From Octopus sinensis (lineage: Eukaryota), in the NCBI RefSeq assembly GCF_006345805.1, contig NW_021831682.1, positions 1 through 36,905 of the forward strand: DNA of 36,905 nucleotides. Direction: 5' to 3'. The notes beneath the pieces are model-generated. The model was not told the DNA's origin, did not search any database, and saw nothing but the letters and a program-made list of their open reading frames with translations. Shown one piece after another: positions 881 through 35,255 of the stretch. A program made the translations under genes and the position numbers. Position 1 is the first letter of the stretch. The number at the start of each line of letters is the position of its first letter.

Positions 881-1254
881 TTTTTTTTCATTTTTTGTGG
901 TTTATTTTTTTTTATATTAATTTTTTCATTTTTCCTTTGTAATTTCCTTTTTTTTTTTTTTTGTTTTTACTGGCGGAAATGGGGCAGGGGGAGATGCGGC
1001 AGGCGGAAATGCGGCAGGCAAGAAAGCGACACACAAAAAAGCGACCACACAAAAAAGATTTAATTAATTACCTTATTAAGCTGACCGTTTTTTCTTCAGC
1101 TTCGTTTTTCCTCCTTCGGTTATCTATTTAAAAAATTATTTTTGAATAATAAAAAAGTTAGGAGGAAAAGAGGCATACCGAAAATAAATTCTATCTTTAC
1201 GAAAAACTCAAGTAAATAGTTAATATTTTTACGCAAATTCTTCTGATTGCGCTG

Positions 1255-1458
1255 TCAATTGGTGGTAAATTGTGTTAATGGTTGTGCTAATGTGGTTTCA
1301 ACTATCAAAGTGTTTTTCAAAATCTGTTAATTGCACACTCTATTCAAGGTCGTGCGTCAATTGGTGGTAAATTGTGTTAATGATTGTGCTAATGTGGTTT
1401 CAACTATCAAAGTGGTTTTTCAAAATCTGTTAATTGCACACTCTATTCAAAGTCGTGC
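1255..1458. repeat. Tandem duplication, 102-bp unit x2, inside the Helitron
   Basis: tcaattggtggtaaattgtgttaatg... starts at 1255 and 1357; the copies are near-identical. Confidence 0.9.
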
Positions 1459-1664: not shown

Positions 1665-2460
1665 GCCTTGAAGGTTTTAATGGACCTCATCATGAATGTC
1701 GAGGACATTCGCGTTGTTCATTTTAATCAAAACAGAAAATAAATTTTTTGATTTTTGGGGGAAGGTTTTAAGGACTTCATCATGTAAGTCGAGGACATTG
1801 TAGTTGTTCATTTTAAACCAAAAGCAGAAAATTTTTTTTTAATTTTTTTTGGGGGGAAGGTTTTAAGGACTTCATCATGTAAGTAGGACATTGTAGTTGT
1901 TCATTTTACCAAAATGCAGAAAATTTTTTTTTAATTTTTAATTTTTTTGGGGGAAGGTTTTAAGGACTTCATCATGTAAGTCGAGGACATTGTAGTTGTT
2001 CATTTTAACCAAAATGCAGAAAATTTTTTTTTAATTTTTTTTGGGGGAAGGTTTTAAGGACTTCATCATGTAAGTCGAGGACATTGTATTGTTCATTTTA
2101 ACCAAAATGCAGAAAATTTTTTTTTATTTTTTTTTGGGGGAATTTTAAGACTTCATCATGTAAGTCGAGGACATTGTAGTTTTCATTTACCAAAATTGCA
2201 GAAAATTTTTTTTTAATTTTTTTGGGGGAAGGTTTTAAGGACTTCATCATGTAAGTCGAGGACATGTAGTTGTTCATTTTAACCAAAATGCAGAAAATTT
2301 TTTTTTTAATTTGTTTTTGGGGGAAGGTTTTAAGGACTTCATCATGTAAGTCGAGGACATTGTAGTTGTTCATTTTAACCAAAATGCAGAAAATTTTTTT
2401 TTAATTTTTTTGGGGGGAAGGTTTTAAGGATACCTCATCATGTATCGAGGACATCGTATT
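1665..2460. repeat. Minisatellite, ~90-95-bp unit x ~9, inside the Helitron
   Basis: Unit gggggaaggttttaaggacttcatcatgtaagtcgaggacattgtagttgttcattttaaccaaaatgcagaaaatttttttt...; units differ mainly in homopolymer lengths. Confidence 0.93.
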
Positions 2461-2485
2461 GCCAATTTGAAGTTGGTGTGCACAC

Positions 2486-2516: not shown

Positions 2517-3120
2517 CACACCATACCATTTTATTATTAAGATTATCCACTTTAAAATTCCTATCCTTGGTGAAGATTTTGTTAAAAATCGAAAATGATC
2601 GTTCTACTGCGCACGATGTTGCCTGACATCCAATCAACAAAGAATAATCTAAAGGTGAAATGGAATGATCATCGAAATTCATAATTTTTGTGATATCATT
2701 GGAATTCATCCTTTTGATAATATAATTTTTTATTCCACACACGTCTTCTTTAAAATCCAATGTTTTCAAATAATTAAATGCTTTTTTTATAGTAAAATTG
2801 GTCGATTCTAAATCATCAAGCAAATGTAATAAAGGTGAATATTGTGATATTATCGTCGTTAGATCTTTATGAAGTTGTTCATTAAATAAACATTCTTTCG
2901 CTCTTTTAATAAGCATTCCATTTGCATTACATAATTTACAAAAAAGCATTCCATTTGGTGTAATTGTAAACTCTTTAGAATATTTTCACAAATATTTTAG
3001 CTTTTTTAAAATCCGAAGGTTATTTTTAGGCATAAGTACACTATAATTTAGTTTAAAATTTGTTACAATAAGAGACAAATGTCACTGCGACTACTTTAAA
3101 TTTATTTTGATGCTTTAAAT

Positions 3121-4063
3121 CAGCGGTTCTCAACCGTGGTCCCCAGAAAATTTTTAGTGGTCCCCAGGAATTTTCGAAAAATAAAAATATATTAAGTTAA
3201 AACTAATTGTACAATTAAATATAAATCAAAAACATTGAAATTAATCAAGCGGTTCTCAACCGTGGTCCCCAGAAAATTTTTAGTGATCCCCAGGAATTTT
3301 CGAAAAATAACAATATATTAAATTTAAAACTAATTGTACAATTAAGTATAAATCAAAAACATTGAAATTAATCTGATTTGATTAGCGTGGTTTATCATTC
3401 TATTTATGGTTAACAAGAATCGTCGTCTTTGGTCGGATTCTTACGTACAATTTGGATTCACTAAATTCATTGCCCCAAATAATGAAATAAAGGCAAAATG
3501 CATGATTTGCCATAAAATTTTGGGAAACAATTCACTGAAACCTTCTCAACTTAGGCGCCACAAAGAGTCTGTACACCCAGAAAATTCTTCCTCACATGAA
3601 TATTTTAAAGTCAAAAGAACGAAGTTTGATTCACAGCCAAAGATTGAGTGGTTTAATAAATCTCAAGATAAACCGAGATTAGAACCATCATATGCTGTAA
3701 TTTTAATTTTCTAAAAACAAAATATAGAAATGTCGTGTCTGACTTTTCTAAAAACAAAATATAGAAATAGACTACGGGTACAAGATGATATGCGAGTAGC
3801 TTTGTCGAACATAGAGCCTGATATAAGTAAAATTATTCTGAGCAAACAAGATCAGAAATCTCACTAAATTACTATTAAATTTTCTGTTATTTTCATAATG
3901 TTCATGTTATTTTTATAATAAATATTCGAACATGTCTAAACCTGGCGAGGAGGCCAAAAATTGTGCGTTAATACCAAAAAATGTTTATTTTTATTAAGGT
4001 GGTCCCCACAAAATTTTATAGTGCAAAAGTGGTCCCCAGTCTAAAAAAGGTTGAGAACCGCTG
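3121..4063 (+). mobile_element. Internally deleted Buster-type (ZBED5-like) hAT element
   Basis: TIRs cagcggttctcaacc (3121) and ggttgagaaccgctg (to 4063). BED zinc finger CMICHKILGNNSLKPSQLRRHKESVH (ORF 3406-3714) is joined to the Buster C-terminus RNRLRVQDDMRVALSNIEPDISKIILSKQDQKSH* (~3763-3867). The left ~126 bp is tandemly duplicated (3121 and ~3247). Confidence 0.9.
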
Positions 4064-4350
4064 GACTAGATTATATTAAAAAAATAACAGCATGGGTCGC
4101 CAAAATAAATATAAAAAATAATTCAGAAAGTTTTAAGTAATATATATTTTATGTTGCAATATACAGTGCCTGAAAAAAATTGGATTTGAAATAAATCGAC
4201 TTTTTTTAAAGTAAAGTTGTTTCTTAACTTCCTCACGAATGCTTATTAGAAATCAAACTTTCAGAAATTTGGAATGTGCTGACAAAAAATTCCAGGAAAA
4301 AAGAACGTCTAAAAATCAATATAAAAAACTAGATTTTTGTCTGTTCGGAA

Positions 4351-4960
4351 ATGTTAACGACGTTTTATTTATTTATTATATTTCACATGGTCTTAGCTGG
4401 AGGAATTAGAGAGAATCCATTATGTAAATTTGTATTAGTAAAATATAGTTACATCGCGAGGGGATACCGGATTACATATTAATGAGAGAGGTTTAATCTA
4501 AAAGTAATTTTAAATAGAATTTACGAAACAAGTTGAAGAAATTTTGCGAACTAATTATGGAATTGCTCAATTTCGACCGAATTTAGAGATCACAGTATTC
4601 TTTTATTTATTTTTTGCAAAGAAACAAAACAATTTAGAACAGGAATTCGCTGATCTTATGAAAAGTGACACTATATTAGATATTATGAACACATATTATA
4701 ATTCACCTGGACATCAAGCTCTAGTCTCGCTTATTTTCGAGATATTCGGCATAACACTGACAACTACAACAGAGGCAACTACAACAACCACAACAGAAGC
4801 ATCGACAACTACAACAGAGGCAGCGAAATTGCCTACGATAAAGGCAGCGAAATCGCATACAACAGAGAAAGTGAAATGTACTACAGCGAGACAATCGCCT
4901 AAAACAGATAAGTACCTATTCATACTAACTAATATTATTTACTTTTTGGAATTTTACTAA
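4351..4960 (+). CDS. Secreted Thr-rich (mucin-like) orphan protein, copy 1, 4 exons, ~175 aa
   Basis: ATG at 4351 gives signal-peptide-like MLTTFYLFIIFHMVLA. GT-AG introns 4424-4448, 4491-4517 and 4595-4621 give one open frame through TTTTEA repeats to a hydrophobic C-terminus KYLFILTNIIYFLEFY*. An extra intron at the very 3' end cannot be excluded. Confidence 0.7.
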
Positions 4961-5424
4961 TTTAATTTAACGCGATGTTTTGTGATAAAACTATTTATCA
5001 GTTTATTTTATTTAAGAAACATATAAGAGATTAATTTTTGATGCTGTTGATTTCTTATTTTTTTGATCTATTATTATTAATAAGCGCACCTTCAAAACAA
5101 CCTAAATAAAGTTTTTTCGCCATTCTGAATGTGTTTTGTTAATCTCTTCCATTTCACTTTGTTCCTCGACAGTTTTCTCAGAACTCGATGTCGTCTGCCT
5201 ATGTCAGCCCTTTTCCAATCAAGGTTAAGTCTTGATGTAGAAAGGTTAGTAGAGTAAGTAAAGTAAGATCGGTTTTACGAAAATTAGAGGCAGTCTTCCT
5301 CGAGTATTTTTATCCATCAGCATTTAAAAACATAATTTTATCAACAATAATTCGTATTATTCAAAAAAATTTTGTTAAATTATTTATTAACATTTTTTTC
5401 TTGTGGGCACATTTTTGTTATTAA

Positions 5425-6216
5425 ATGGCTATCGAAGATCTATTTAGCAATGCTCAGCTATTATCAGTAATTGGAGAACATGATCTATATGACCAGAATA
5501 TAAAAACAAAAATAAACGAATGGACACATTTGGGGGATACTACAGTCCCTACAAATATACAAAATAGTTGATTACGTAACCTAATGACTAGTAATATCCT
5601 TTAGCAGGCGTTATTCATTGATATTTTGCTGTGGAATACTTATAACCGAACTAAATACTTTATTTTTAGCCTCTCTTCACGAATTACTACACGCTGGAGG
5701 AGTCCTTTTATTCATTTTCGAGAAATCAAATGATTTATTGGACTCAAAACTAATCAGATTACTCAAGATTGCTGGTTTTTTCTCACCAATAGACGTACAA
5801 TAATATTTATAAACATACAGCAATCAAATGAACTCGACTCCTCATTCATCACTGTCCAGAAGGCGAGTTTTGCCAATGGGACATCAATATCGAATATTTG
5901 GAGTGACATTGACTACGAGGAAGAGGGAGAGACGATCAACAGTGATGAGATATTGGAAGAGCAAGACAAACTGCCTCCTGTGAGGATCAGTTACACAGCA
6001 AAACAGAAGAGGAGAGCATGTGCGAATTGTACGTGTGGATTGGATGTTTCGGAGGGTGTGATGAGGTCTTCTTGTGGGAATGTATTTGTGTGGTTATAGT
6101 AGTAGTGCTATCTCGGAGATGCATTTCGATGTGATGGTTGTCCTTACAGTGGTCTGCCCCCCTTCAACCCTGGAGATGTGGTTGAGATTCCCGATACTGA
6201 TTTGTTTGATCTATAA
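5425..6216 (+). CDS. CIAPIN1: Anamorsin / Dre2 (cytosolic Fe-S assembly), copy 1, 4 exons
   Basis: Three GT-AG introns of 24-26 nt (first 5567-5591) give an open frame ending ...[12 protein letters not shown]...SSCGN|[24 protein letters not shown]..., the family signature. Confidence 0.93.
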
Positions 6217-6481
6217 TCCAGTTAAAATTATTTTGTGTCAAAAAACGTGTTTCTGGCCTGATTTTTTATTGACCCCTCTAATATTTAATCGACCCTCTTA
6301 AAAAATTTTATATACAACAGACAATATTAAATAATATTTATATATACCAGACAAAACTAAGTAAAATTAGTTACTTTCCAGTATTTAATCAAACGAATAT
6401 TTATAGCCATAGTCAGAGGCAATACTCTGGCAATCTGCCAATGACCATTTTTCTGTAGTCCTTTTATTAATACATGATAAT

Positions 6482-7953
6482 TAGGGCAACTAAAAAGTTG
6501 ACCTAAAAATTTAAAAATTGACCTCTAAAAGTCAACTAAATTGACCCAAAAAAACGAAAGTTGACCTAAAAAGAGCCAAGAATTTTTTTTAATCAGGAGT
6601 TATAAAGAATCATATAAAATTTAAGGTTCTCCGGTTTAAAATTCCGATCTTTTGCCAAAATTTTATGGAGAATTGAAAATGAACGCTCCACAGAACATGT
6701 AGTTGCCTGACATTGAAGTAGTCGCAACTTTTCCATAGGCGAAAAATTTTCTTCGTTAACAATTTTCATAATTTCATTCTTATTCATTCTTTTATCAATA
6801 TATTCTTTTATTTTGCAGGTATCTTCTTTCAGATCGAGTATTTTCAAAAAATTGATAGCCTTCTCGATTGAAAAGTTTGTGGACTCAATTTCAGGAAGAA
6901 CATCTGCAAGTGGAGAATACTGATTCCATATTTCTTTTAAATCATTAACAAGTCCTTCATGGTTTATTGATTCTTTTGCCCTCCGAATCAATAGGGATTC
7001 TCCTTTTAACGAATTGCATATTTCCAACACTCTGGAAAAATGTTCCACGTAGTACTTGGTTGCTCGAAGCCAACTTCCCCATCTAGTAACAATAGGTTCT
7101 GGAGGTAGTCCTATTTCAGAAAATAGTTGCCTTCGACTACTGTTTTTGAGAACAAGTTCTTTAATGGAGGCAATTAAGTTATCCACTGTAGGGTAACTTA
7201 GTTTTATCCTTAAAGCACAATTTTGTATCAAATGTGCAATGCATGTTACGTGGAATAGGTAAGGGTACAAATTTTCAGAGTGTTTCCTGCTGAAATCATT
7301 TACTTTGCCGCGTCGGTTAACAACAAGTAAAAATTTTTCCTTTCAATATTTGCATGTCGGATCGTATCGTCCACAATCTGGCATACAATTGATGCGTTCG
7401 GCGAAGAATTTAATACAATACAATCAATAAGATAACTGTTTTGGGGATCAGTTATTTTCCCAATAAGAATATTGACAAATTTATCTTTACCGGCATCAGA
7501 CTCATCAACAATTAAGAAAATCCTTTCATTAATTAACAATTGGATAATCTCACTAACACGTCTTTCTGCCAAAATTTTGACATTGTTTGACATTTTGATT
7601 CTGAAGGTAACACAAATCCAATAGTATTAAAAAAATTTATTAAGGCAGGATTCCGTAATTTATATAATGGAATATTTGCTGAAACAAATGCTTTAGTTAG
7701 ATTGAGCGAAAAATCATTAGTAACAACAGTAGTGGGAAAAAACCTTTGAATGGTCTTTTTAGGCTCGTTCATATGCGATTTATGTTTTTGCGTCAATCTG
7801 TGTTTTTCTACAAACCATTTTTTATGGAATGTAAAAAATTAATATTTATATATTTTAAATAAATATTTTAAGCAGAAAATTACAAATTGACAAAAAATAC
7901 AAAAATTGACAAAGTTGACCAAAAGTTGACATTATTGACTTTTGGTTGCCCTA
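6482..7953 (-). mobile_element. hAT DNA transposon (defective), copy 1
   Basis: TIRs tagggcaac / gttgcccta, exact 8-bp TSD atgataat (6474-6481 and 7954-7961), subterminal A[A/G]TTGAC repeats. The transposase is split into ORFs 7533-7796, 7300-7593 and 6593-7270 by two frameshifts and a TAA; VDESD and CSVERSFS motifs present. Confidence 0.93.
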
Positions 7954-8025
7954 ATGATAATCATTTTTACCAACTATCTAAATTCATTATTAATAATCAA
8001 ACAAAACTCAATGAAAAAACTCGAT

Positions 8026-8953
8026 AGTCAAAATTTTTAAAACATCTAGGCATTTTTGGTTTTCCAATCATCACAGGTTTCAATTTATGACTTCCGGTCA
8101 TGTTTGAACAAAGCATAATAGACACACGGTCTTTAAAATTTTTGTATCCTTGGAATCGGTTTCTGCATACGCTTTTCGATGGAATAAGCTTGTAGTATAA
8201 TGCAGTTTCATCCAAATTATAAATTAGATCAGGCTTATACGATTTAGAAATTTCTTTAAATTCTTCACGAAAAGAATTAATGTCAACTACTTTATCTGTT
8301 CGCATCTCTCCATGTAATTTTAGCATTCTAAAACCGTGTCTCTTTTTGAATTTTGCCAGAAATCCATTAGAATTTTTAAAGTTACTAAGTTGTAGCTCTT
8401 CGGCAAAATGCGCAGCCTTACACGATATTAAGGAATCATTCAAAAAACCACCTAAAAATTGGTTTTCAATTAATACCTTTAGACTCTATTGTATCCATCC
8501 ATTCGATCAATTTTTCTTCAAGCGTAGGAAATTTTGGTTTGTGAGCAGCTTTATACGAATTTTGATAGATTTTCGAATCCCGTAAAATAGAGTCTTTATT
8601 AAGCAGTAGATTATTGATCGTCTTTCTCGAGATCGTCTTGTGGAATAAATGTGAGAATCTGTCAGCCAGAAGCTGACACGAAACACTGTCATTTTCTTCC
8701 TTGTAGTTTATAATTTGTGTTTTTTCAAGAAAAGTGAGCCGAGTATAACGTCCACGAGAAATTTTATAAGACATGTGATTAAAAAAATAGTTTATTTTCT
8801 AATTAAAAAAAATAATAATTCAAAAATTGTGGCCAATTTGAGAATTGGCCAATTTACTAAGAAAATTAATTTTTTTCTTAGTAAATTGTGCAAAAATTGG
8901 CCAATTTAAAAATTGGCCAATTTGCGAGGTGGCCAATTTGCGAGGATTCACTG
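8026..8953 (-). mobile_element. 5' half of a pogo/Tigger (Tc1/mariner) element with a 25-nt intron
   Basis: TIR cagtgaatcctcgcaaattggcc next to TA (8954-8955), with repeated palindromic ttggccaa subterminal motifs. HTH_psq and CENP-B HTH, then DDE_1 start (NLDETALY...KDRVSIMLCSN...KPVMIGK). ORFs 8466-8774 and 7997-8443 join in frame through GT-AG intron 8452-8476. Confidence 0.88.
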
Positions 8954-9215
8954 TATAAAAAATAATTCAGAAAGTTTTAAGTAATATATATTTTATGTTG
9001 CAATATACAGTGCCTGAAAAAAATTGGATTTGAAATAAATCGACTTTTTTTAAAGTCAACTTGTTTCTTAACTTCCTCACAAATGCTTATTAGAAATTAT
9101 ACTTTCAGAAATTTGGGATGTACTGACAAAAAATTCCAGGAAAAAAGAACGTCGAAACAATTGAATATAAAAAACTAGACTAATTTAATTCAACGCGATA
9201 TTTTGTCTGTTCGAA

Positions 9216-9780
9216 ATGTTAACGACGTGTTATTTATTTATTATATTTCACATGGTCTTAGCTGGAGGAATTAGAGATAATCCATTTTGTAAATTTGTAT
9301 TAGTAAAATATAGTTACATCGCGAGGGGATACCGGATTACATATTAATGAGAGAGGTTTAATCTAAAAGTAATTTTAAATAGAATTTACGAAACAAGTTG
9401 AAGAAATTTTGCGAACTAATTATGGAATTGCTCAATTTCGACAGAATTTAGAGACCATAGTATTCTTTTATTTATTTTTTGCAAAGAAACAATACAAGTT
9501 AGAACAGGAATTCGCTGATCTTATGAAAAGTGACGCTATATTAAATATTACGGACAAATATTATAATTCACCTGGACATCAAACTCTAGTCTTGCTTATT
9601 TTCGAGATATTCGGCATAACAGTGACAACTACAACAGAGGCAACTACAACAACTACAACAGAGGCAGCGAAATCGCCTACAAAAGAGAAAGTGAAATGTC
9701 CTACAGCGAGACAATCGCCTAAAACAGATAAGTACCTATTCATATTAACTAATATTATTTACTTTTTGGAATTTTACTAA
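9216..9780 (+). CDS. Secreted Thr-rich orphan protein, copy 2 (stalk 15 aa shorter)
   Basis: Same exon structure as copy 1 with identical intron sequences; open frame MLTTCYLFIIFHMVLAGGIRDNPF...KYLFILTNIIYFLEFY*. Confidence 0.7.
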
Positions 9781-10267
9781 TTTAATTCAACGCGATGTTT
9801 TGTGATAAAACTATTTATCAGTTTATTTTATTTAAGAAACATATACTCGGTGATCTAATTTTTAATGCTGTTGATTTCTTATTTTTTTGATCTATTATTA
9901 TTAATAAGCGCACCTTCAAAACAACCTAAATAAAGTTTTTTCGCCATTCTGAATGCGTTTTGTTAATCTCTTCCATTTCACTTTGTTCCTCGACAGTTTT
10001 CTCAGAACTCGATGTCGTCTGCCTATGTCAGCCCTTTTCCAATCAAGGTTAAGTCTTGATGTAGAAGGGTTGGTAGAGTAAGTAAAGTAAGATCGGTTTT
10101 ACGAAAATTAGAGGCAGTCTTCCTCGAGTATTTTTATCCATCAGCATTTAAAAACATAATTTTATCAACAATAATTTGTATTATTCAAAAAAATTATTAA
10201 AAAATATTTTGTATTTTGTTAAATTATTTATTAACATTTTTTTCTTGTGGGCACATTTTGTTATTAA

Positions 10268-11059
10268 ATGGCTATCGAAGATCTATTCAACAATGCTCAG
10301 CTATTATCAGTAATTGGAGAACATGATCTATATGACCACAATATAAAGACAAAAATAAACGAATGGACACATTTGGGGGATACTACTGTCCCTACAAATA
10401 TACAAAATAGTTGATTACATAACCTAATGACTAGTAATATCTTCTAGCAGGCGTTATTCATTGATATTTTGCTGTGGAATACTTATAACCGAACTAAATA
10501 CTTTATTTTTAGCCTCTCTTCACGAATTACTACACGCTGGAGGAGTCCTTTTATTCATTTTCGAGAAATCAAATGATTTATTGGACACAAAACTAATCAG
10601 ATTACTCAAGATTGCTGGTTTTTTCTCACCAATAGACGTACAATAATATTTATAAACATACAGCAATCAAATGAACTCGACTCCTCATTCATCACTGTCC
10701 AGAAGGCGAGTTTTGCCAATGGAACATCAATATCGAATATTTGGAGTGACATTGACTACGAGGAAGAGGGAGAGACGATCAACAGTGATGAGATATTGGA
10801 AGAGCAAGACAAACTGCCTCCTGTGAGGATCAGTTACACAGCAAAACAGAAGAGGAGAGCATGTGCGAATTGTACGTGTGGATTGGATGTTTCGGAGGGT
10901 GTGATGAGGTCTTCTTGTGGGAATGTATTTGTGTGGTTATAGTAGTAGTGCTATCTCGGAGATGCATTTCGATGTGATGGTTGTCCTTACAGTGGTCTGC
11001 CCCCCTTCAACCCGGGGGATGTGGTTGAGATTCCCGATACTGATTTGTTTGATCTATAA
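10268..11059 (+). CDS. CIAPIN1: Anamorsin / Dre2, copy 2, intact
   Basis: Same model as copy 1 with an open frame; 4 amino-acid differences counted. Confidence 0.92.
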
Positions 11060-11339
11060 TCCAGTTAAAATCATTTTGTGTCAAAAAACGTGTTTCTGGC
11101 CTGATTTTTTATTCGTTGATTTTTTATTGACCCCTCTAATATTTAATCGACCCTCTTAAAAAATTTTATATACAACAGACAATATTAAATAATATTTCTA
11201 TATACCAGACAAAACTAAGTAAAATTAGTTACTTTCCAGTATTTAATCAAACGAATATTTATAGCCATAGTCAGAGGCAATACTCTGGCAATCTGCCAAT
11301 GACCATTTTTCTGTAGTCCTTTTATTAATACATGATAAT

Positions 11340-12824
11340 TAGGGCAATTAAAAAGTTGACCTAAAAATTTAAAAATTGACCTCTAAAAGTCAACTAAATT
11401 GACCCAAAAAAACGAAAATTGACCAAAAAGTTGACCTAAAAAGAGCCAAGAATTTTTTTTAAATCAGGAGTTATAAAGAATCATATAAAATTTAAGGTTC
11501 TCCGGTTTAAAATTCCGATCTTTTGCCAAAATTTTATGGAGAATTGAAAATGAACGCTCCACAGAACATGTAGTTGCCTGACATTGAAGTAGTCGCAACT
11601 TTTCCATAGGCGAAAAATTTTCTTCGTTAACAATTTTCATAATTTCATTCTTATTCATTCTTTTATCAATATATTCTTTTATTTTGCAGGTATCTTCTTT
11701 CAGATCGAGTATTTTCAAAAAATTGATAGCCTTCTCGATTGAAAAGTTTGTGGACTCAATTTCAGGAAGAACATCTGCAAGTGGAGAATACTGATTCCAT
11801 ATTTCTTTTAAATCATTAACAAGTCCTTCATGGTTTATTGATTCTTTTGCCCTCCGAATCAATAGGGATTCTCCTTTTAACGAATTGCATATTTCCAACA
11901 CTCTGGGAAAATGTTCCACGTAGTACTTGGTTGCTCGAAGCCAACTTCCCCATCTAGTAACAATAGGTTCTGGAGGTAGTCCTATTTCAGAAAATAGTTG
12001 CCTTCGACTACTGTTTTTGAGAACAAGTTCTTTAATGGAGGCAATTAAGTTATCCACTGTAGGGTAACTTAGTTTTATCCTTAAAGCACAATTTTGTATC
12101 AAATGTGCAATGCATGTTACGTGGAATAGGTAAGGGTACAAATTTTCAGAGTGTTTACTGCTGAAATCATGTACTTTGCCGCGTCGGTTAACAACAAGTA
12201 AAAATTTTTCCTTTCAATATTTGCATGTCGGATCGTATCGTCCACAATCTGGCATACAATTGATGCGTTCGGCGAAGAATTTAATACAATACAATCAATA
12301 AGATAACTGTTTTGGGGATCAGTTATTTTCCCAATAAGAATATTGACAAATTTATCTTTACCGGCATCAGACTCATCAACAATTAAAAAAATCCTTTCAT
12401 TAATTAACAATTGGATAATCTCACTAACACGTCTTTCTGCCAAAATTTTGACATTGTTTGACATTTTGATTCTGAAGATAACACAAATCCAATAGTATTA
12501 AAAAAATTTATTAAGGCAGGATTCCGTAATTTATATAATGGAATATTTGCTGAAACAAATGCTTTAGTTAGATTGAGCGAAAAATCATTAGTAACAACAG
12601 TAGTGGGAAAAAACCTTTGAGGGGTCTTTTTAGGCTCGTTCATATGCGATTTATGTTTTTGCGTCAATCTGTGTTTTTCTACAAACCATTTTTTATGGAA
12701 TGTAAAAAATTAATATTTATATATTTTAAATAAATATTTTAAGCAGAAAATTACAAATTGACAAAAAATACAAAAATTGACAAAGTTGACCAAAAGTTGA
12801 CATTATTGACTTTTGGTTGCCCTA
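11340..12824 (-). mobile_element. hAT DNA transposon (defective), copy 2
   Basis: Same TIRs and TSD atgataat (11332-11339 and 12825-12832). It shares both frameshifts with copy 1 but has TAC where copy 1 has TAA. Confidence 0.93.
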
Positions 12825-13143
12825 ATGATAATCATTTTTACCAACTATCTAAATTCATTATTAATAATCAAACAAAACTCAATGAAAAAACTCGATGTTA
12901 AGTTAGTCGATAGTCAAAAAAACTCGATAATCAAAATTTTTGACAATCATTTTCTGTATCGAATTTGATTTTCCGTTTGGTTGTCTCACGTGGTTGGGGT
13001 TAGAGGGTCTGATTAAAGGCAATGGACGCGGAGGGTTGGTCTAAGGTGGCTGACTTGGAGGGTTAAAAGATGTGTGGTTAAAGTGAGAGGTGCTGACCAC
13101 AACATTCCAACAGTATTAAATACAAAGATAGCGTTTTAGTGAA

Positions 13144-15593
13144 ATGTTTAATGTATTTCCACACATAAAACTCACTTGATTTAGATTTTTAAAAAGAAAT
13201 CAAAAAATAAACCACTGAAAACGAATTTGGAATTAAATGAACAAAATTTTGACAAAATAAAAGAATTGTGCCTACAAAACAACGCCCTGTTCCAAGACCC
13301 GGACTTTCCTGCAGACGATTCATCTCTATTTTATAACAAAACAATCCAAGGACAAGTCAGGTGGGTCCGTCCGACAGTAAGTCTCACTCAATTATGACAG
13401 GAAATTGTCCCGAATCCCAATTTCATAGTCGACGGAGCCTCGAGATTTGACATTGTTCAGGGCTCTCTGGGTGAATTGGCATAAAATAAATTGCCAGGTG
13501 ATTGCTGGATGTTGGCAGCAGTGGCAGTCCTCACTACTGACCCACGCCTGTTTGCCAAAGTGGTCCCAATGGAGCAGACCTTCGAAGAAAGTGAGTACTT
13601 TGGAGCATTTCGATTCATGTTCTGGCACTTTGGAGAATTTAAACAAGTGGTGGTGGACGACAGACTTCCTACCCTCAACGGTGAACTCATATTTATGCAA
13701 TCCGCACAAAAAGACGAATTCTGGTCTGCCCTTTTAGAGAAAGCCTACGCCAAGTCAGTCCCTCTGACCATCCCAGAATGTGTGGCTGCTACCAAGCCCT
13801 CGAGGGAGGCTCAGCCTTGGAAGCCCTCATTGACTTTACAGGCGGAGTCGGAGAGAGATTTGACCTATCAAGAACCTCCTCTAAACTATTTTCCCAACTC
13901 AACTCAGCCCTTCTAAGACAATCCTTAATGTCCTGTGCCATAATAGTATTCTCACATATACAAATCAGGGCAACACTTTGGAGGGCAAACTAGCCAATGG
14001 CCTAATCATGTTACACGCCTATTCATTGACAGGACTTGTAGAGGTTATTCCACTCATATAAAATAGGTGACCCTCACTAGACTGGGACAACAAGTCCAGT
14101 TGGTCAGATTGCGGAATCCGTGGGGACAGGTTGAGTGGAATGGTCCGTGGAGTGATGGGTCACCCGAATGGGGACTCGTCTCTCCCACGGAAAAAAACCA
14201 ACTTGATCTTGTCTGTCAAAATGACGGAGAATTCTGGTCGGGTTTTCCGTGATTTGTAGGATGGATTGGAAAGATTTTACTTCCAACTACTCCATTGTCG
14301 AGGTATGCAACCTCCAGCCAGATTCCGTCACGGATTCCGTGATCGACCAGTGGAAGGTGACACAATTCGAAGGGTCCTGGGTCAAATTTGTCACCGCGGC
14401 GGGAAATATTAAGTCAAGTAATTTTTTTTGGTTATTTTTGAATCTTATTTGTCAAATCCCACGTTTTTGTTTCAAGTTGGAGAGACTCAGCAGAGGACCA
14501 CGGAAGTTCTCATTTCGGTCTCTCAGAAAGACCGGAGGAGACTCTTTGCCCAAGGGAAGTCAATGTTGGCCATTGCTTTCCACGTTTTTGAGGTATTTTT
14601 TTAATTATATGAGAATTTTGGCGGGAAAAAACGCCTAGTTGGGAGTTCTGGTCCCTACAGTAATAAAAGGGAAATATCTCAGAGATTTGAACTCAGGGCT
14701 GGGAGTTATTCCCTTATAGTCTCCACATATGAGCCCAATATTCCCGGGGAATTTTTAGTGAGGATCTTCAGTGAGACGGAGACCACAGAAGTGTATAAAT
14801 ATAAACAATTTATTTAATTAATATTTAAAAATAATTAATTAATATTTTTAAATATATTATTTTAGTGAGGAACAAGTTGATCAAGTGGTGAGTCCTTGTC
14901 ATATTATTGCCCAAGGACCCCATCAATGATACTGAGGACGTCGATTCAATGTTCAGGGAGGCTGCCGGTGCTGACATGGAAATACAAACTAATGATCTTT
15001 ACAAATTATTGAACAAAGAAACAACTATAGGTTTAATTAATTATACAATTACTTAATAAATTATAAAATAATTAATTAAATAATAAAATAGGTAAAAATG
15101 AGTTCTCGTGGAGAAACACTGCACAATTGATTTCACTATACGACGTTGGTATTATACGTTGACTCATAGACCGATGGGACCGGTTCTCTCGGCCTGGAGG
15201 AATTTCGAGACCTTTGGATCAGAATTACTCAAGCCAGGGTATGCCTTATCCCACTAATAAAGACAATCTTCAAAGAGGCTGACTCTGACAATTCAGGCAC
15301 ACTAAGCACATTCGAACTGAGGAGAGCAATCCGCCGTACAGGCAGCAGAATAAGCAACAGGACGACAATGTCTTTGGTACTGAAACACTCTGATGAGAAT
15401 GGCCTGTTCTCGTTGGACGATTTTGTGGTGTGTGTTGTCAAAATAAACAGAGCTGCTGGTTTATTCTTTCCTGGCATTCTTTCTAGTAATTTTCAGACGA
15501 CAAGCCAAGTCCTCGCTTGTGGCCACATTTACACTAGAAAGGGTAGGTGGTTGGTTTATTTGTTAGTTTATTGACGATGTGTGTTCTCTTTAA
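13144..15593 (+). CDS. Classical calpain (CysPc, C2-like domain III, penta-EF hand), ~17 exons
   Basis: Spliced model has QGSLGDCW (Cys), HAYS (His) and LRNPWG (Asn), domain III motifs ([31 protein letters not shown]) and EF hands ([26 protein letters not shown]). Most introns are 21-32 nt; stop TAA at 15591-15593. Paralogue not assignable. Confidence 0.95.
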
Positions 15594-15691
15594 TTTATTA
15601 ATATTAATTATTTATTTCTAACATGGAATTATTTTATTAATTTAAAATAAATAATAAAATTTTAATAATTTATTTTCTGGTGGTGTCACAC

Positions 15692-18435
15692 ATGGAGACC
15701 GAATTGATATTCATGAAAGAAGACGCTCTAATGAAATTAGGCTTACTTTTTGTAAAAAAATAAGAAAATAATAAATAAAAGGACGACACAGACATTCCCT
15801 TTGAAGAAGAACTAATCCGGAATCCTTTTTCAGTAAAAATATGGCTGAGATACATCGAGCACAAAGAGGACTCCAACCCAGAGACTTTGTACATCCTCTA
15901 TGAACGGGCCCTCAAAGAGCTTCCAGGAAGGTAAACCCCGGGAAACCACCTCAGCTATAAAATATGGATCCACTACCTCAATTTCCGAACAGAACGAACC
16001 AAATTGTTGTGTGTGAACAGTCCAGAGTATCAGAAACTAAACGAATTGTACGAAAGAGCCCTCATACTTATGGGGAAAGTAATACAAGCCAGGATTACTT
16101 GATAGATGCCCAGAATATGGCTTAACTACCTCGATTTGCTTATCCACGAAGGACTGATCACTCGGACTAGGCGGACATTCGACCGATGCCTCATATCCCT
16201 GCCCATAACACAGCACAAAAGAATGTGGCATCACTTGATTGGGTTTATAAAGCAATGTAATGTTCCACTGACTACTTTTAAATTGTTTAAACGCTATTTA
16301 AAAGTATTGAGGTGTGATGTTCTATTGTTAGATCAAGTGGGACTGTGCAGAAGATGTGGTTGTTTACTATAGGAGTGTGGGGTACTACAATGATGCTGCT
16401 AAACTGCTTATGGATATCATCAATGACCAGAGATTTGTCTCAAAACATGGCAAATCAAAATATCAGGTGACACACATGAGTTTAAATTCAAATTATATAT
16501 TTAAAATTAATTAAATATATTATTAATTTAATAAATGTTAAGTTGTGGGGTGATTTATGTGAGTTGATGGTGAAGCACGTGGATATAACATCGATAGACG
16601 TGGATGGGATAATAAGACAGGGAATAGACCAGCACAGTGACCAGACAGGCGTGTTGTGGAACTCCCTGGTGGAGTACTACACTCGGAATGGGCAGTTCGA
16701 TAAGGCGAGGGATGTCTATGAGGAGGCAATGGTCAAAGTGAAGACAGTGTGTGACTTTACCCAAATATATGAGGGATATGCCCACTTTGAGGAGTCCCTC
16801 ACATCTGCAGCCATTGAACAGCTGGGAGAGGAGGCCACAGAAGAGGGTTGGTTGTCTTTAATAGGCAGAAATACTCGACGTGGAGTACTGTGCAGCCAGA
16901 TATGAGTATTTGATAGAACGGAGGGCAATCATGTTGAACAGGCAGGCCTCTTTGCTTATTCCCAGTGTCAAAATCAGACAAAACCCTCACAACGTGGAGA
17001 ACTGGCAGCAGAGGGCACTCCTGGCTGCGGAGAGGGAGGATCCTGTGGGGGTAGTGGAGGTGTACACGGAGGCACTCCACACAATTAATAACGAAATAGC
17101 AGTGGGCAAACCACATTCACTGTGGGTGGCCTTCGCATTGTTTTATGAAAAGGCGGGAAATATAATACAAGTATTTTTTCGCGCCATTTTTAAATAGGCG
17201 CGGAATGTATTTGAAAAGGCGATTGAGGTGGAGTTTAGTTGTGTGGAGGATTTGGCGAGTGTTTGGAGTGAGTGGATAGAGATGGAGATTCGACAGGAGT
17301 TGGGATATTCCCTCTACCCTTAGAAACATCCCCCAGGCATTCGACCTCCTCAAGAAAGTGACCAGTCCCCCCAAAAACAGAAGACATGTGTCATATTTCG
17401 ACAAATCCCACTCGATCCACAGCCGAGTGCACAAGTCTCTCAAACTGTGGTCACTCTATGCTGACTTGGAAGAGAGTTTCGGCTGCTTTGAGGGACAGTC
17501 GATAGTAAATTGTAGAAATGCAGAGCAGTGTATGACAGCATCCTCGACCTGAGAATAGCCACCCCTCAGTTGATAATGAACTACGCCCTGTTTATGGAGG
17601 AACACAAATATTTCGAGCAGTCATATCAGGTGGTGGGAGTGATGGACAGGCAGGTATTCGAGAGGGGGATTGGGCTGTTTGGGTGGCCAGTGGTGGTCGA
17701 CCTGTGGAATTCGTATCTGTCCAAGTTCATAGGGCGATATGTGAGGGATGGAAATGACAATTGCAGGGGGGAGACAAACTGGAGAGATGTCGGGACTTGT
17801 TTGAGCAGTGTTTGGAGGACTGTCCTCCCCAATACGCCCAACGTAGGCCAGTGTGATAAGAATAGACTTTTATACAATGTACGGGCAGATGGAGGAGGAC
17901 CACGGACTGAGGAGACATGCCATGGCAATCTACCAACGAGCCACGGAATGTGTGCCAATGGAGACCAAAATGAAGGTGTAGGTCATAGTGAGTCCCAGAT
18001 GTTCAAACATTACATATCACGTGCCTCCGAGTGGTTTGGAATGACGAGTGTGCGAGGAATATACGAGAAGGCCATCCAAGTGTTGGGTGATGGGGACAGT
18101 CGGTCAGTCTGGGGTGTCATTTGTAGAGAAATGAGTATTGCCTTTGCCAAATTGGAGGAGAAGTTGGGGGAAATGGAGAGAGCCAGAGTCATCTACAGTC
18201 ATTGCTCTCAGTTCTGTGACCCTGCGGTATTCCGAGGTGTTCAGTTTAGGTGGATGACGAGTTCTGGTCGTTGTGGTCACAGTTTGAGTTGCACTATGGC
18301 AATGAGGACACCATTCGGGAGATGTTGAGGGTCAAACGATCAGTCCAGGCCTTCTACAACACGGCAGTCATGCGCCCTATTGAGCCCACTCATCCCATGG
18401 AGATTGCCCAGGCCAATCAAAGTGGGGTTGTCTGA
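15692..18435 (+). CDS. XAB2: Pre-mRNA splicing factor SYF1 / XAB2 (HAT repeats), ~17 exons
   Basis: Spliced model follows XAB2 throughout: [87 protein letters not shown]. Confidence 0.96.
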
Positions 18436-19139
18436 TTGACCCCTTCATTTGGATACATTTGTTTATTCATTAATTTAAGGGGATAGTAGTATTATTGGGT
18501 GGACGCGTTAATTTGAGTGGCTGTAGAGACAGCATGTTATGTAGTTTGCATTATTCGTTATAAGAATTTGTTTGTTCAAGTCGTTGTAAATGTGGTGGCT
18601 ACTATTCAAAAGGTAAGAAAAATATCACTGGTTTGATATCCTCCATGCAGTAAAAATATTAAAACTTGATTGTTATGAGTTTTATCCTTTTTGGATTGAG
18701 GAAAGAACGAGAGGTTTTATAAGTAACAATTTTATCTATATTAACTATTAGTCATTAGCTGTAAGTTTGTCTTGATTTCATTTTCCAAAAATATAGTTCA
18801 ACTGCGGAAATTGATTGGTAATCAAAATTTGGACCGGAAATAAAATTATTATTTAGTTTACAATATTATATGCATTATTTTTCCACTAATTTTGGTGATT
18901 GATGTGTTTTTTGTCTTACCTATTTTTAATGTTGCAAAATGTGTCTAGAATTTACAGATCAAAGTCCAAAGAACTTAAAAACAGTGTCATCATTACTTGA
19001 GAGTTTCATCTTTGTATTTATTTTGACATATTCCTGATGTGATTACTATTCAGATGTCGCTGGATTTGAATACGAGAGTGCAACCGGATTATCCGTGAGA
19101 AACCCACGCGCAAGAAAAATAAAAAAAATAATTAAAGAC

Positions 19140-22584: not shown

Positions 22585-24869
22585 ATGTATCCTTTACTGT
22601 TTGCATTATTTGTATGCACTGCATTCTCTTATGACCAGAAGTTGTCATTTGCTGGCCTTGTAATGCTATTATTTCACTCCTCTTTTAGCTACCACTACAG
22701 AAACACGTGCAAAAGGTATTTGGGATAAACAACTGGTTATTTAGAGAGAAGAAATGACACTCTCCGAAGATGTATTATTCTTAATCCCACTACAATTATA
22801 GAGACTCGAGGGACTGATAAATGTGGAATGGGTAAGGAATACGTTTATATTTATATTAGAACATTGTAGTGGAGTGGACAGAACAAAGATATGTAAGCCC
22901 AGTAGTACAATAATATTCAGGACACTAAATTGAGCATATTTGATAAAGTATTAAGGATTGTGATATATTATAGGACAAAATACTTACTTCTCTCCGAGAG
23001 GTAATGCTTGTTTGATAATGAGTAGTACTCTGATGAATATGTGTCCCGACGGTATTAGTGCTTATTATTAATTTATAGCTTCAATCGCATTCCCAGCATT
23101 CCAGGTGAATTTGCTGTTATTACTATTTATAGATTCATACTATAGTTGCTCGTGCCACTGACGCATTGTAGTGCTCATTAGAAACGTTAAAACCACCACT
23201 CCGCCAACCCCGCCCACCCCGACGACACCCAGCACTCCGAGCACGATGCCAAAAGGTTATATTGAATAAAACTATTGTTAGAGAATATAGTAAAACAAGC
23301 CGAAATAAAGTTAAAGGATGAAAGGAACAAGACAAAAGTGATATATAGATCTGTGTATATTAGATTATACAAATCATGGATGATCTGACTAGAACGAACA
23401 ACGTGGAGGAACAAGATATATCCACGTACATTATTCGCGTAAACAGCAGGTTTCACAAACTATGTGAAGAACCCACCGAAAATACCGCGAACTTTGAACT
23501 TTCGAATGAAAAAATACGCATAATAGACAAAACTGTGGCAAGCACATTATCATATGAATTGGAGGAACAAGATATTCAATGCGAGCTCACGTTTGATACA
23601 GAAACAGACATCCACGGTGCATTTTAGATTTATTCCTCTCAGTGAGAACTGTTTACTGGAATGACACGATAACTTTTAAATCCAAAAAGCCCCAAATTTT
23701 GGGCTCGAAGGTTTTCTCAGTAAGTTTGCGAGCTGAAACAGAGTTAAAAGTCAAAATTACATTTCCAGTGAGTCCCACATTTATATTGCTTAGACTAATC
23801 GGACTAACTTGACTTGCGCATATTTTGACGAGAACAATTCGGAGTGGATTACGACTGGGGGGACGACGCTGTTTACTAATGCGGGGGTTGTCTGCGTATT
23901 CAATCACCTGACAAGCTTTGCCGTGATCTTTGTTGCTCCTTGATTGCTGACAACGCAGAGACCAGAACTCCTGAATGTGAAAAGTCCAGTCAAGTTGTAC
24001 ATAAACAGCATACTGCTCGCAATCTCTACATTTTTGATATTTTTTTCAATTATGATATTTATGACGAATATAAAGTATATTTGCTGGTACCACTCGCTAG
24101 AATACAAATCAAGTCGACCTTCCAACTGGCACTGCTTCATTTTGAATTCTCGATGGTAATTGTAAACATTACATTTCTTTCCATACTACAAAACTCGGAG
24201 AACGAGGGAGTGACTGCGTGCACAGCCAAAGGAGTTGTCCTCCATTTCGGACTTTTGGCACAATTTCTGTGGATGCTGGCAGAGACGTACATCCATTATA
24301 TTAAATTTGTCAAAGTCATCGGCATCACCATCAACAAAATAATCACCAAAGCAGTCGTGCTAAATTGGGGTTCTCATGCATTTGACCACTCGCAGGCATT
24401 CCATTGTGTATTGTGGGGACGATCGCTCTTGTTGACTCGCGTGTGTATTACAACGAAGGAAAGTAAGGGATTCTATTTGAGTGGGCAGATGTCTGATATC
24501 GGGTGTGGGACTGTATACAGGCCTGGTGCTTCCCTGTGCTGCAATCGCGTTGGTCAATCTCATCTTGTTTGTCATTATTGGACTTCACATAAAAAAGGCT
24601 CGAGTAGAAAATTCAAAGCAGATGTTTCAGGAGAACAGAATATTGGCATTGTTGGCATTCTCCTCTGGTTTGCCGGTTGTGCTATTCCAGGATTACCGTG
24701 GTTCGTATACTTCTTTGTCCAATTCGACACGACTGGGACATTGGACTACATTGCCAGTCCTGTTATTTGTCTCACTGGGGCCATCGTTGTTATCCTCAAT
24801 TTGATGACCCGGCCAAAGACGACAGTCCAAAATAAGACTATTCGCCAGAAAGTCTTTTCATATTTCTAA
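22585..24869 (+). CDS. Adhesion GPCR: signal peptide, micro-exon ectodomain, Pro/Thr linker, GAIN/GPS, 7TM
   Basis: One stop-free frame across ~19 GT-AG introns of 23-30 nt. Signal peptide MYPLLFALFVCTAFS, GPS CAYF...W...C.FNHL|TSFAVIF, family-2 7TM motifs (CTAKGVVLHFGLLAQFLWMLAE, LNWGIP, GLPW); stop TAA at 24867-24869. Confidence 0.88.
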
Positions 24870-34771: not shown

Positions 34772-35255
34772 TTAATTAGCAGCAGAGGATAAGATGGAAT
34801 GGCAATTCCCACGCAAGATGGCTATTGATATGCGTTGGAAAAGCCATGTCCGTTCCCGACGATCATTTCTTCTTCTGCTTACCAAATCCCCCAGCTTAAT
34901 AAGGAATTTTTTAGTTCTGGAGCCGAGGACTCCCGATGTCTCCACTGCAATCGGGGCAAAGATATGGCGGTGAAATAGTGCACTGTATTTCTTGATTTTT
35001 AGCGTTTCGGCCAGGTTGGCTGCGGAGCCCGGCTCTAAAGCTGACGTCAAGATTTTCCCGGCGGAGAAGGTATCCGTGCAAGTAGCGTCCCAAATGAGAG
35101 ACTTGCCACTTTCAAATGGGAAGGTCGTTAGACCATCAGGACGTTTACCATCCTCCCGAGCCAGCCCGACCGGTTCCAGCTGTGAAGGGAATTTGTCTAT
35201 TATGAACTTCATTCAAAGTGATCTGATGATCAGCTTCAATCCAACTGATTAATTC
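34772..35255 (-). mobile_element. 5'-truncated CRE-clade non-LTR retrotransposon, restriction-like endonuclease domain
   Basis: EPVGLAREDGKRPDGLT...LIWDATCTDT...AETLKIKKY...PIAVETSG...QRISIAILRGN is the PD-(D/E)xK RLE C-terminus typical of CRE-like elements. Confidence 0.85.

What the first reader, a model, noticed from the sequence alone, without database searches (positions are those of the whole stretch)
4351..9780. Duplicated secreted Thr-rich orphan gene shows near-exclusive amino-acid-changing divergence
Seen: comparing 4351-4960 with 9216-9780 outside the Thr repeat, I count 19 non-synonymous and 1 synonymous change, no differences in the 79 nt of the three introns, and a 15-aa stalk indel. 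Both frames are intact. Anamorsin in the same duplicated block shows 4 non-synonymous and 7 synonymous changes (hand-computed one-sided Fisher p about 0.001). Inference: diversifying selection on a secreted or GPI-anchored surface protein, plausibly at a host interface.
Basis: partly seen in the sequence, partly recalled or inferred. Interest (0 to 1): 0.78.

Follow-up and report, generated by a model that had tools for sequence, protein, structure and literature searches.

The report
Fast-diverging duplicated Thr-rich orphan gene
Two tandem copies of a small lineage-specific gene for a probably secreted, threonine-rich protein differ almost only by amino-acid changes, but this does not differ significantly from unconstrained drift in an older stretch of a patchwork duplication.

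Summary
Both copies (4351-4960, 9216-9780) keep a four-exon frame with three identical 25/27/27-nt introns. They differ by 19 non-synonymous and 2-3 synonymous changes plus a 45-nt in-frame indel. Anamorsin downstream shows 4 N: 7 S.

The inference of diversifying selection is not established.
- Pairwise omega is 1.8-3.5, but the test against omega = 1 gives p = 0.06-0.31.
- The Fisher test against anamorsin only shows that the orphan is less constrained than a conserved housekeeping gene.
- The duplicated block (4110-8025 vs 8954-12896) is a mosaic. Its left 1.5 kb is 3.46% diverged and its right 2.4 kb 0.58%, with a change point near 5602.
- The orphan's total divergence (3.7%) and its dN (5.0%) match the non-coding DNA around it (upstream 4.6%).
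- Substitutions are clustered, so the 21 changes are about 15 events.

The gene itself looks real. The spliced ORF exceeds all 300 shuffles and no frameshifting indel is present. No relative was found in any database searched.

Best reading: a young tandem pair of a taxon-restricted mucin-like gene in an ultra-short-intron parasitic animal, evolving at or slightly above the neutral rate. Part of the block was later homogenised by gene conversion.

The parts
4351..4960 (+). Orphan gene copy A: 4 exons (4351-4423, 4449-4490, 4518-4594, 4622-4960), 176 aa. It has a hydrophobic N-terminus, an about 90-aa polar region, a Thr-rich stalk and a hydrophobic C-terminal tail.
   Evidence: The spliced ORF is 176 codons (185 if intron 3 is retained) against a maximum of 127 in 300 dinucleotide shuffles. 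The best minus-strand ORF is only 70 codons.
9216..9780 (+). Orphan gene copy B: exons 9216-9288, 9314-9355, 9383-9459, 9487-9780, 161 aa. It lacks 15 aa of the stalk and carries the only N-x-T sequon (N84-I-T).
4424..4621 (+). Span holding the three ultra-short introns of copy A (4424-4448, 4491-4517, 4595-4621), identical in copy B (9289-9313, 9356-9382, 9460-9486). Intron 3 is 27 nt, in frame and stop-free, so its retention would add 9 aa.
4797..4841 (+). 45-nt in-frame segment present only in copy A. It is one extra unit of the repeated stalk (STTTTEA-AKLPTIK).
4110..8025 (+). Duplicated block, copy A: upstream region, orphan gene, anamorsin and a decayed hAT-type transposon fragment.
   Evidence: Self-BLAST, global alignment and Pfam hAT dimerisation hit.
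8954..12896 (+). Duplicated block, copy B, in direct orientation. It starts at the TA next to the terminal repeat of the spacer transposon.
8026..8953 (-). Spacer between the copies: a truncated pogo/Tigger-type DNA transposon (CENP-B_N, HTH_Tnp_Tc5 and the start of DDE_1). Its end ...CAGTGAATCCTCG abuts block B.
5425..6216 (+). Anamorsin/CIAPIN1 copy A (4 exons, introns of 25, 26 and 24 nt). Copy B lies at 10268-11059. Both are intact, with omega = 0.18.
4110..5601 (.). High-divergence segment of the block: 50 substitutions in 1445 aligned nt, 3.46%.
   Evidence: change point at 5602, likelihood-ratio statistic 45.
5602..8025 (.). Low-divergence segment of the block: 14 substitutions in 2424 nt, 0.58%. 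Probably homogenised by gene conversion.
9179..9206 (+). 28-nt copy (92.9%) of the gene's own 3' end (4956-4983 / 9776-9803), inserted 10 nt upstream of copy B's ATG. It is absent from copy A and bounded by short shared motifs (ACTA, TTTTGT).

Best explanation
A roughly 3.9-kb piece of an animal genome with 24-27-nt introns was duplicated in tandem. It carries a small taxon-restricted gene, anamorsin and a dead hAT fragment, and a truncated pogo-type transposon sits at the junction.

The orphan gene encodes a 161-176-aa protein. It has a signal-peptide-like N-terminus, a polar region of about 90 aa, a Thr-rich (mucin-like, presumably O-glycosylated) repeat stalk and a hydrophobic C-terminal tail. 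Its most likely role is a membrane-tethered or secreted glycoprotein.

Shown: both copies are kept open and spliceable, and amino-acid sites change as fast as the neighbouring non-coding DNA (omega about 1-3). Inferred: selection acts against disruption, and the paralogues are drifting under weak constraint, possibly with a modest adaptive component.

The block is a mosaic. Its right 2.4 kb (most of anamorsin plus the transposon fragment) was recently homogenised, most likely by gene conversion. The left 1.5 kb with the orphan gene kept the older divergence of about 3.5%. That history, not protein-level selection, explains why the orphan looks so much more diverged than anamorsin.
For: - Block limits and the list of differences.
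- Change point at 5602, 3.46% against 0.58%, LRT 45. Upstream non-coding is 4.58%, the orphan gene 3.72%, the intergenic stretch 2.16%, and the first 177 nt of anamorsin 4.52%.
- NG86: dN 0.052, dS 0.029, omega 1.8, Fisher p = 0.26.
- ML GY94: omega 1.8-3.5, p = 0.06-0.31. Anamorsin omega is 0.18, p = 0.007.
- Codon positions of the changes are 8/9/4, with no periodicity (chi-square p = 0.37).
- Clustering: 15 of 49 neighbour distances are <= 5 nt against 7.9 expected, P = 0.004. This gives about 15 events in the gene, of which 13 change the protein.
- The gene looks real. The spliced ORF of 176/161 codons exceeds all 300 shuffles (maximum 127). The minus strand gives only 70/54 codons. Intron lengths match those of anamorsin.
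- Under neutrality P(no stop, start or splice loss in 21 substitutions) is 0.19-0.25.
- The flanking non-coding 703 nt carry six indels, none a multiple of 3. The 565-nt gene carries one, of 45 nt and in frame.
- Hydropathy peaks lie at aa 1-17 and 162-176, and 20 of 44 stalk residues are Thr.
- No homologue was found: (only a low-complexity Thr hit).
Against: - The omega point estimate is above 1 in every version of the test.
- If the 79 intron positions are counted as neutral, the N excess becomes nominally significant (p = 0.005-0.036; Fisher 19/378 vs 2-3/184, p = 0.013-0.037). Some positive selection cannot be excluded.
- Thirteen of the 19 replacements fall in aa 59-110, with none synonymous there. 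Two of them together create an N-glycosylation sequon in copy B.
- Gene conversion is inferred from the divergence step only. A two-step duplication, or overwriting of the left part of one copy from a third, more diverged paralogue, would give the same picture.
- Transcription, splicing, secretion and glycosylation are all untested.
Confidence: 0.6

Rival explanations
1. One reading: diversifying (positive) selection drives amino-acid divergence between two paralogues of a parasite surface or secreted glycoprotein at a host interface. Selection may also keep the left segment from being homogenised.
For: - Omega point estimates are 1.8-3.5.
- 19 N against 2-3 S, with zero changes in 79 intron nt. 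Nominal p is 0.005-0.036 with introns treated as silent.
- Replacements are concentrated in aa 59-110 (13 N, 0 S). Four changes within 14 nt turn LDIMNT into LNITDK and create a sequon.
- Intron 3 is untouched, although changes lie 2 and 7 nt from its ends.
- Ultra-short introns point to an obligate parasite, either a myxobolid myxozoan or Dicyema (PMC13644364).
Against: - Omega is not significantly above 1 on coding sites (p = 0.06-0.31).
- dN equals the divergence of the adjacent non-coding DNA.
- Clustered multi-nucleotide changes occur in non-coding DNA too. They are known to mimic positive selection (my own knowledge).
- The finding was picked out because it looked extreme.
- With two sequences and no outgroup there is little power.
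- Localisation and a host interface are untested.
Confidence: 0.25
2. The ORF is not a functional protein-coding gene. It is a chance or decaying ORF, or one copy is a young pseudogene, and the whole region evolves neutrally, so the N/S classification has no meaning.
For: - There is no codon-position periodicity in the changes (8/9/4).
- Divergence equals the non-coding background.
- There is no homologue anywhere and no Pfam domain.
- There is no expression evidence.
Against: - A 161-176-codon ORF needing three GT-AG introns of exactly the genome's typical length is intact in both copies. It exceeds all 300 shuffles.
- The gene has no frameshifting indel, while the flanks have six in 703 nt.
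- The joint chance of staying intact under neutrality is roughly 0.2 for substitutions times about 0.02-0.05 for indels. The second is my own Poisson estimate from the indel counts.
- The signal-like, stalk and tail architecture is coherent.
Confidence: 0.1
3. The two 'copies' are allelic haplotypes of a heterozygous locus wrongly assembled in tandem, so the differences are polymorphism rather than paralogue divergence.
For: High overall identity (97% over 3.3 kb). Uneven divergence is common between haplotypes.
Against: The copies are separated by a unique 928-nt transposon fragment. Block B starts exactly at that element's TA target site. The sequence runs on into unique genes (calpain, SYF1). 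Both are more natural for a real tandem arrangement.
Confidence: 0.05

Closest known systems
Mucin-like, Thr-rich, membrane-tethered surface glycoproteins of parasites (for example the mucin gene families of trypanosomes or the gp40/15-type glycoproteins of Cryptosporidium; from my own knowledge)
   Same: The layout is the same: N-terminal signal-like segment, a variable region, a Thr-rich stalk made of short repeats that vary in copy number, and a short hydrophobic C-terminal tail. Copies sit in tandem and their protein sequence diverges fast.
   Different: There is no sequence similarity to any of them. Only two copies are seen. The GPI signal and O-glycosylation were not tested. The organism is an animal, not a protist.
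Young tandem duplicates under concerted evolution, with gene-conversion mosaics
   Same: Direct repeats 4.8 kb apart show a sharp step in divergence (3.46% to 0.58%) at one point inside a gene. That is the classical signature of a conversion tract.
   Different: The direction and donor of the conversion cannot be established without an outgroup. A transposon fragment sits at the duplication junction.
Taxonomically restricted (orphan) genes with omega near 1
   Same: Short, low-complexity-rich, with no homologue, weak sequence constraint and a preserved ORF.
   Different: 'Orphan' is a weak claim here. Even conserved genes of this window find relatives of only 33-49% identity, so the lineage is very poorly sampled in the databases.

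Membership tests
Genes under positive/diversifying selection | dN/dS significantly greater than 1 on a proper codon alignment | tested here: inconclusive
   NG86 omega is 1.8, Fisher p = 0.26. ML GY94 omega is 1.8-3.5, LRT p = 0.06-0.31.
Genes under positive/diversifying selection | Replacement-site divergence exceeds the local neutral divergence | tested here: not met
   dN is 5.0%, against 4.6% upstream non-coding and 3.0% for upstream plus intergenic (Fisher p = 0.066).
Secreted proteins with a cleavable signal peptide | N-terminal hydrophobic core of 7-15 residues followed by small residues at -3/-1 | tested here: inconclusive
   FYLFIIFHMVLA followed by A-G-G; Kyte-Doolittle score 2.2-2.4. 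There is no basic n-region and no dedicated predictor was available.
GPI-anchored proteins | Small omega/omega+2 residues, a polar spacer of 6-10 aa, then a C-terminal hydrophobic tail of 12-20 aa ending the protein | not testable with these tools
   By eye: C150-T-A, spacer RQSPKTDK, tail YLFILTNIIYFLEFY (15 aa, containing N and E). Copy B has Pro at the omega+1 candidate. No GPI predictor and no experiment.
Mucin-like (PTS) proteins | Thr/Ser/Pro-rich repeat region | tested here: met
   20 of 44 stalk residues are Thr, in TTTTEA-type repeats whose copy number differs between the copies. The only database hit is a low-complexity Thr-repeat protein.
Anamorsin / CIAPIN1 (the control gene) | C-terminal CIAPIN1 domain with the Cx2C...Cx2C motifs | tested here: met
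   Pfam PF05093 E = 2.7e-19, 69.9 bits against a cutoff of 22. 155 homologues carry PF05093.
Orphan / taxon-restricted gene | No detectable homologue outside the lineage | tested here: met
   No hit among 5.8 billion clusters, 1.84 billion representatives, JGI metagenome contigs or Pfam. Caveat: no close relative of this organism is in those collections.

The most novel reading that the evidence does not exclude
The orphan pair is a host-exposed glycoprotein of an ultra-short-intron parasite (myxobolid or dicyemid) that is really under diversifying selection. Selection for paralogue difference also protects the left 1.5 kb from the gene conversion that homogenised the rest of the block. It would be the first candidate antigenic or host-interaction gene family of such an animal.
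Probability: 0.2. Interest if true: 0.6.

Novelty: new member of a known kind. Interest (0 to 1): 0.27.

Why it matters
If the gene is expressed, it is a candidate surface or secreted glycoprotein of a very poorly known parasitic animal lineage, and a small example of how tandem paralogues diverge while their neighbours are homogenised.

As it stands the value is mainly cautionary, for three reasons.
- A striking N:S count between two paralogues was tested against a housekeeping gene rather than against neutrality.
- The duplicated block has two histories.
- Clustered substitutions inflate the counts.

Tried and rejected
- Homologue searches with the spliced protein, an exon-4 profile against 1.84 billion representatives (one low-complexity hit, rejected as homology), metagenome contigs by protein pattern and by exact DNA, and Pfam. 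All were negative.
- Further family members in the window, by tblastn and sensitive blastn: none.
I did not work around this. Only the exon-4 translation was searched, and no structure was predicted because a 46-aa non-repeat piece would say little.
- Naming the organism through anamorsin and SYF1 homologues: the best hits are 33-49% identical, so no close relative is present. The contigs of the two top anamorsin hits show different neighbours and were dropped.
- The literature narrows the source to myxobolid myxozoans or Dicyema japonicum. The window's GC of 33.6% lies between the published 29.1% and 36.7%, so this stays undecided.
- Is the 156-nt substitution-free stretch (4423-4577, covering introns 1 and 2) exceptional? 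It is not (P = 0.15).
- No Rfam family in the window.
Full report
**Setting**

The window is animal DNA, 33.6% G+C. It carries a calpain (Peptidase_C2, E = 7e-36), SYF1/XAB2 (E = 7e-50) and a secretin-family 7TM receptor. It also carries anamorsin (CIAPIN1, E = 2.7e-19) and several DNA-transposon remnants of hAT, zf-BED and pogo/Tigger type.

Every intron I could define is 24-27 nt long. According to PMC13644364, introns this short are known among animals only in myxobolid myxozoans and in Dicyema japonicum, all of them obligate parasites. I could not decide between the two. The best database relatives of anamorsin and SYF1 are only 33-49% identical, so no close relative of this organism is in the protein collections.

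Self-comparison shows one direct duplication, 4110-8025 against 8954-12896.
- Copy A: exons 4351-4423, 4449-4490, 4518-4594 and 4622-4960, 176 aa.
- Copy B: exons 9216-9288, 9314-9355, 9383-9459 and 9487-9780, 161 aa.
- The three introns (25, 27 and 27 nt) are identical between the copies.
- The copies differ by 19 non-synonymous substitutions.
- They differ by two clear synonymous substitutions: ACC/ACT in the Thr repeat and CTA/TTA at codon 166.
- A third synonymous difference, GAA/GAG, depends on where the indel is placed.
- They also differ by a 45-nt in-frame indel in the stalk.

**The gene looks real**
- A search for the longest ATG-to-stop path with up to three GT-AG introns of 23-28 nt gives 185 and 170 codons on the plus strand. 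That is the model plus in-frame retention of intron 3.
- The same search gives a mean of 42 and a maximum of 127 codons in 300 dinucleotide shuffles, and 70 and 54 codons on the minus strand.
- Under neutrality the chance that 21 substitutions destroy no start, stop, splice site or frame is 0.19-0.25.
- The 703 nt of non-coding flank carry six indels (2, 20, 1, 4, 20 and 1 nt). The 565-nt gene carries one, and it is a multiple of three.
- Together this argues that both ORFs are being kept open.

**The protein**

There are hydropathy peaks at aa 1-17, 97-110 and 162-176. The stalk has 20 Thr in 44 residues, built of TTTTEA-type units. No Pfam domain reaches its threshold.

An R-G-D tripeptide (aa 28-30) is present in both copies. 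Copy B alone has an N-x-T sequon (N84-I-T), made by two of the substitutions.

A signal peptide and a GPI signal are plausible by eye, but no predictor was available. The middle hydrophobic stretch leaves a membrane-spanning topology open.

**Selection tests**
- Nei-Gojobori gives S = 105, N = 378, dS = 0.029, dN = 0.052 and omega = 1.8. The Fisher p against equal rates is 0.26.
- A pairwise Goldman-Yang likelihood fit gives omega = 1.8-3.5, depending on indel placement and codon frequencies. The likelihood-ratio p against omega = 1 is 0.06-0.31.
- The same code gives omega = 0.18 (p = 0.007) for anamorsin.
- A site-class calculation with kappa 1-3 gives P(N >= 19) = 0.04-0.21 on coding sites. 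Only when intron positions are added as neutral sites does it fall to 0.005-0.036.
- The changes fall 8/9/4 on codon positions 1/2/3, so there is no periodicity (p = 0.37).

It answers a different question, though: it shows that the orphan is less constrained than a conserved Fe-S assembly protein, which a pseudogene would be too.

**The block has two histories**

Copy-to-copy divergence by region:

| Region | Divergence |
|---|---|
| Upstream non-coding, 4110-4350 | 4.58% |
| Orphan gene | 3.72% |
| Intergenic, 4961-5424 | 2.16% |
| First 177 nt of anamorsin | 4.52% |
| Rest of anamorsin | 0.65% |
| 6217-8025 | 0.55% |

- A two-rate model places the change point at 5602: 50/1445 against 14/2424, likelihood-ratio statistic 45.
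- The orphan gene therefore sits in a 1.5-kb segment that is six times more diverged than the rest of the block.
- Its total divergence and its dN (5.0%) are what the surrounding non-coding DNA shows. Fisher for 19/378 against 21/703 gives p = 0.066.
- The simplest account is an older duplication whose right 2.4 kb was later homogenised by gene conversion.
- A two-step origin, or overwriting of one copy's left part from a third paralogue, cannot be excluded.

**Substitutions are clustered**

In the left segment, 15 of 49 neighbour distances are 5 nt or less, against 7.9 expected (P = 0.004). The clusters occur in non-coding parts too (4213/4216, 4254/4256, 4310/4315/4317, 5026-5030).

In the gene, four changes lie within 14 nt (4679-4692) and there are three further close pairs. 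Merging these leaves about 15 events, of which 13 change the protein. On the slightly coarser grouping tested, 14 events of which 12 change the protein, P(>= 12 of 14) is 0.19-0.33. Multi-nucleotide events are a known source of false positive-selection signals (my own knowledge).

The 156-nt substitution-free stretch that covers introns 1 and 2 is not exceptional (P = 0.15).

**Orphan status**

No relative was found among 5.8 billion protein clusters. A full HMMER pass over 1.84 billion representatives found only a 1775-aa protein matched 11 times by the Thr repeat. JGI metagenome contigs gave nothing by protein pattern or by exact DNA, and there is no further copy elsewhere in the window. Given how poorly this lineage is sampled, this shows only that the gene is not widespread.

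**Architecture of the duplication**
- The spacer 8026-8953 is a truncated pogo/Tigger-type element on the minus strand (CENP-B_N, HTH_Tnp_Tc5, start of DDE_1).
- Its terminal sequence ends at 8953, and block B begins with the TA that follows it.
- This suggests that the transposon end was involved in, or inserted at, the duplication junction.
- Block A begins about 40 nt after another transposon (about 3115-4068), which has inverted ends and a zf-BED ORF.

**Verdict**

The counts are right and the gene is probably real and lineage-specific. Diversifying selection is a possibility, not a finding. The best-supported reading is a young tandem pair of a mucin-like, probably membrane-tethered or secreted protein, evolving at about the neutral rate in the unhomogenised part of a mosaic duplication.

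Noticed in passing
window 4110-8025 vs 8954-12896, change point near 5602: The duplicated block is a mosaic: 3.46% divergence to the left of 5602 and 0.58% to the right (LRT 45). The step lies inside anamorsin and looks like the edge of a gene-conversion tract.
   Followed up: yes
window 9179-9206 (source 4956-4983 / 9776-9803): A 28-nt copy of the orphan gene's own stop-codon region sits just upstream of copy B's ATG and is absent from copy A. It is bounded by short shared motifs (ACTA, TTTTGT), which suggests a templated insertion during repair or a relic of an older head-to-tail array.
   Followed up: partly
window 4595-4621 and 9460-9486: Intron 3 of the orphan gene is 27 nt, in frame and without a stop. 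If retained it would add the hydrophobic peptide VFFYLFFAK. It is identical in both copies, although substitutions lie 2 and 7 nt from its ends.
   Followed up: partly
window 4679-4692 / 9544-9557: Four substitutions within 14 nt change LDIMNT to LNITDK and create the only N-glycosylation sequon (N84-I-T), in copy B only. An RGD tripeptide (aa 28-30) is conserved in both copies.
   Followed up: partly
window 5425-6216 and 10268-11059: Anamorsin/CIAPIN1 is present as two intact copies under purifying selection (omega 0.18). Eight of the 12 differences across the anamorsin span (11 exonic, 1 in intron 1) lie in the first 177 nt.
   Followed up: yes
window 8026-8953 (minus strand): A truncated pogo/Tigger-type transposon lies exactly between the two blocks. 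Its terminal repeat ends at the TA that starts block B, so the transposon may have mediated the duplication.
   Followed up: partly
window about 3115-4068: A DNA transposon remnant with inverted ends (GCGGTTCTCAACC / GGTTGAGAACCGC), an internal 126-nt tandem duplication of its left end, and a zf-BED ORF (3406-3714).
   Followed up: partly
window 1670-2461 and 2488-2520: A tandem array of about eight units of about 95 nt (87-90% identical), followed by a (GACA)n microsatellite. It overlaps the end of a hAT-like ORF on the minus strand (2401-2949).
   Followed up: no
window 1250-1340 vs 1355-1445: A direct repeat of about 90 nt (GTCAATTGGTGGTAAATTGTGTTAATG...), seen while reading the sequence.
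   Followed up: no
window 13250-18440 and 23940-24869: Higher-GC genes with 24-27-nt introns: a calpain with an EF-hand tail, SYF1/XAB2 and a secretin-family 7TM receptor. They show that the source is an animal with ultra-short introns (myxobolid myxozoan or dicyemid, per PMC13644364).
   Followed up: partly
window 31930-33430 and 34772-35212 (minus strand): Long ORFs of 328, 153 and 146 aa with no Pfam match. Their function is unknown.
   Followed up: no
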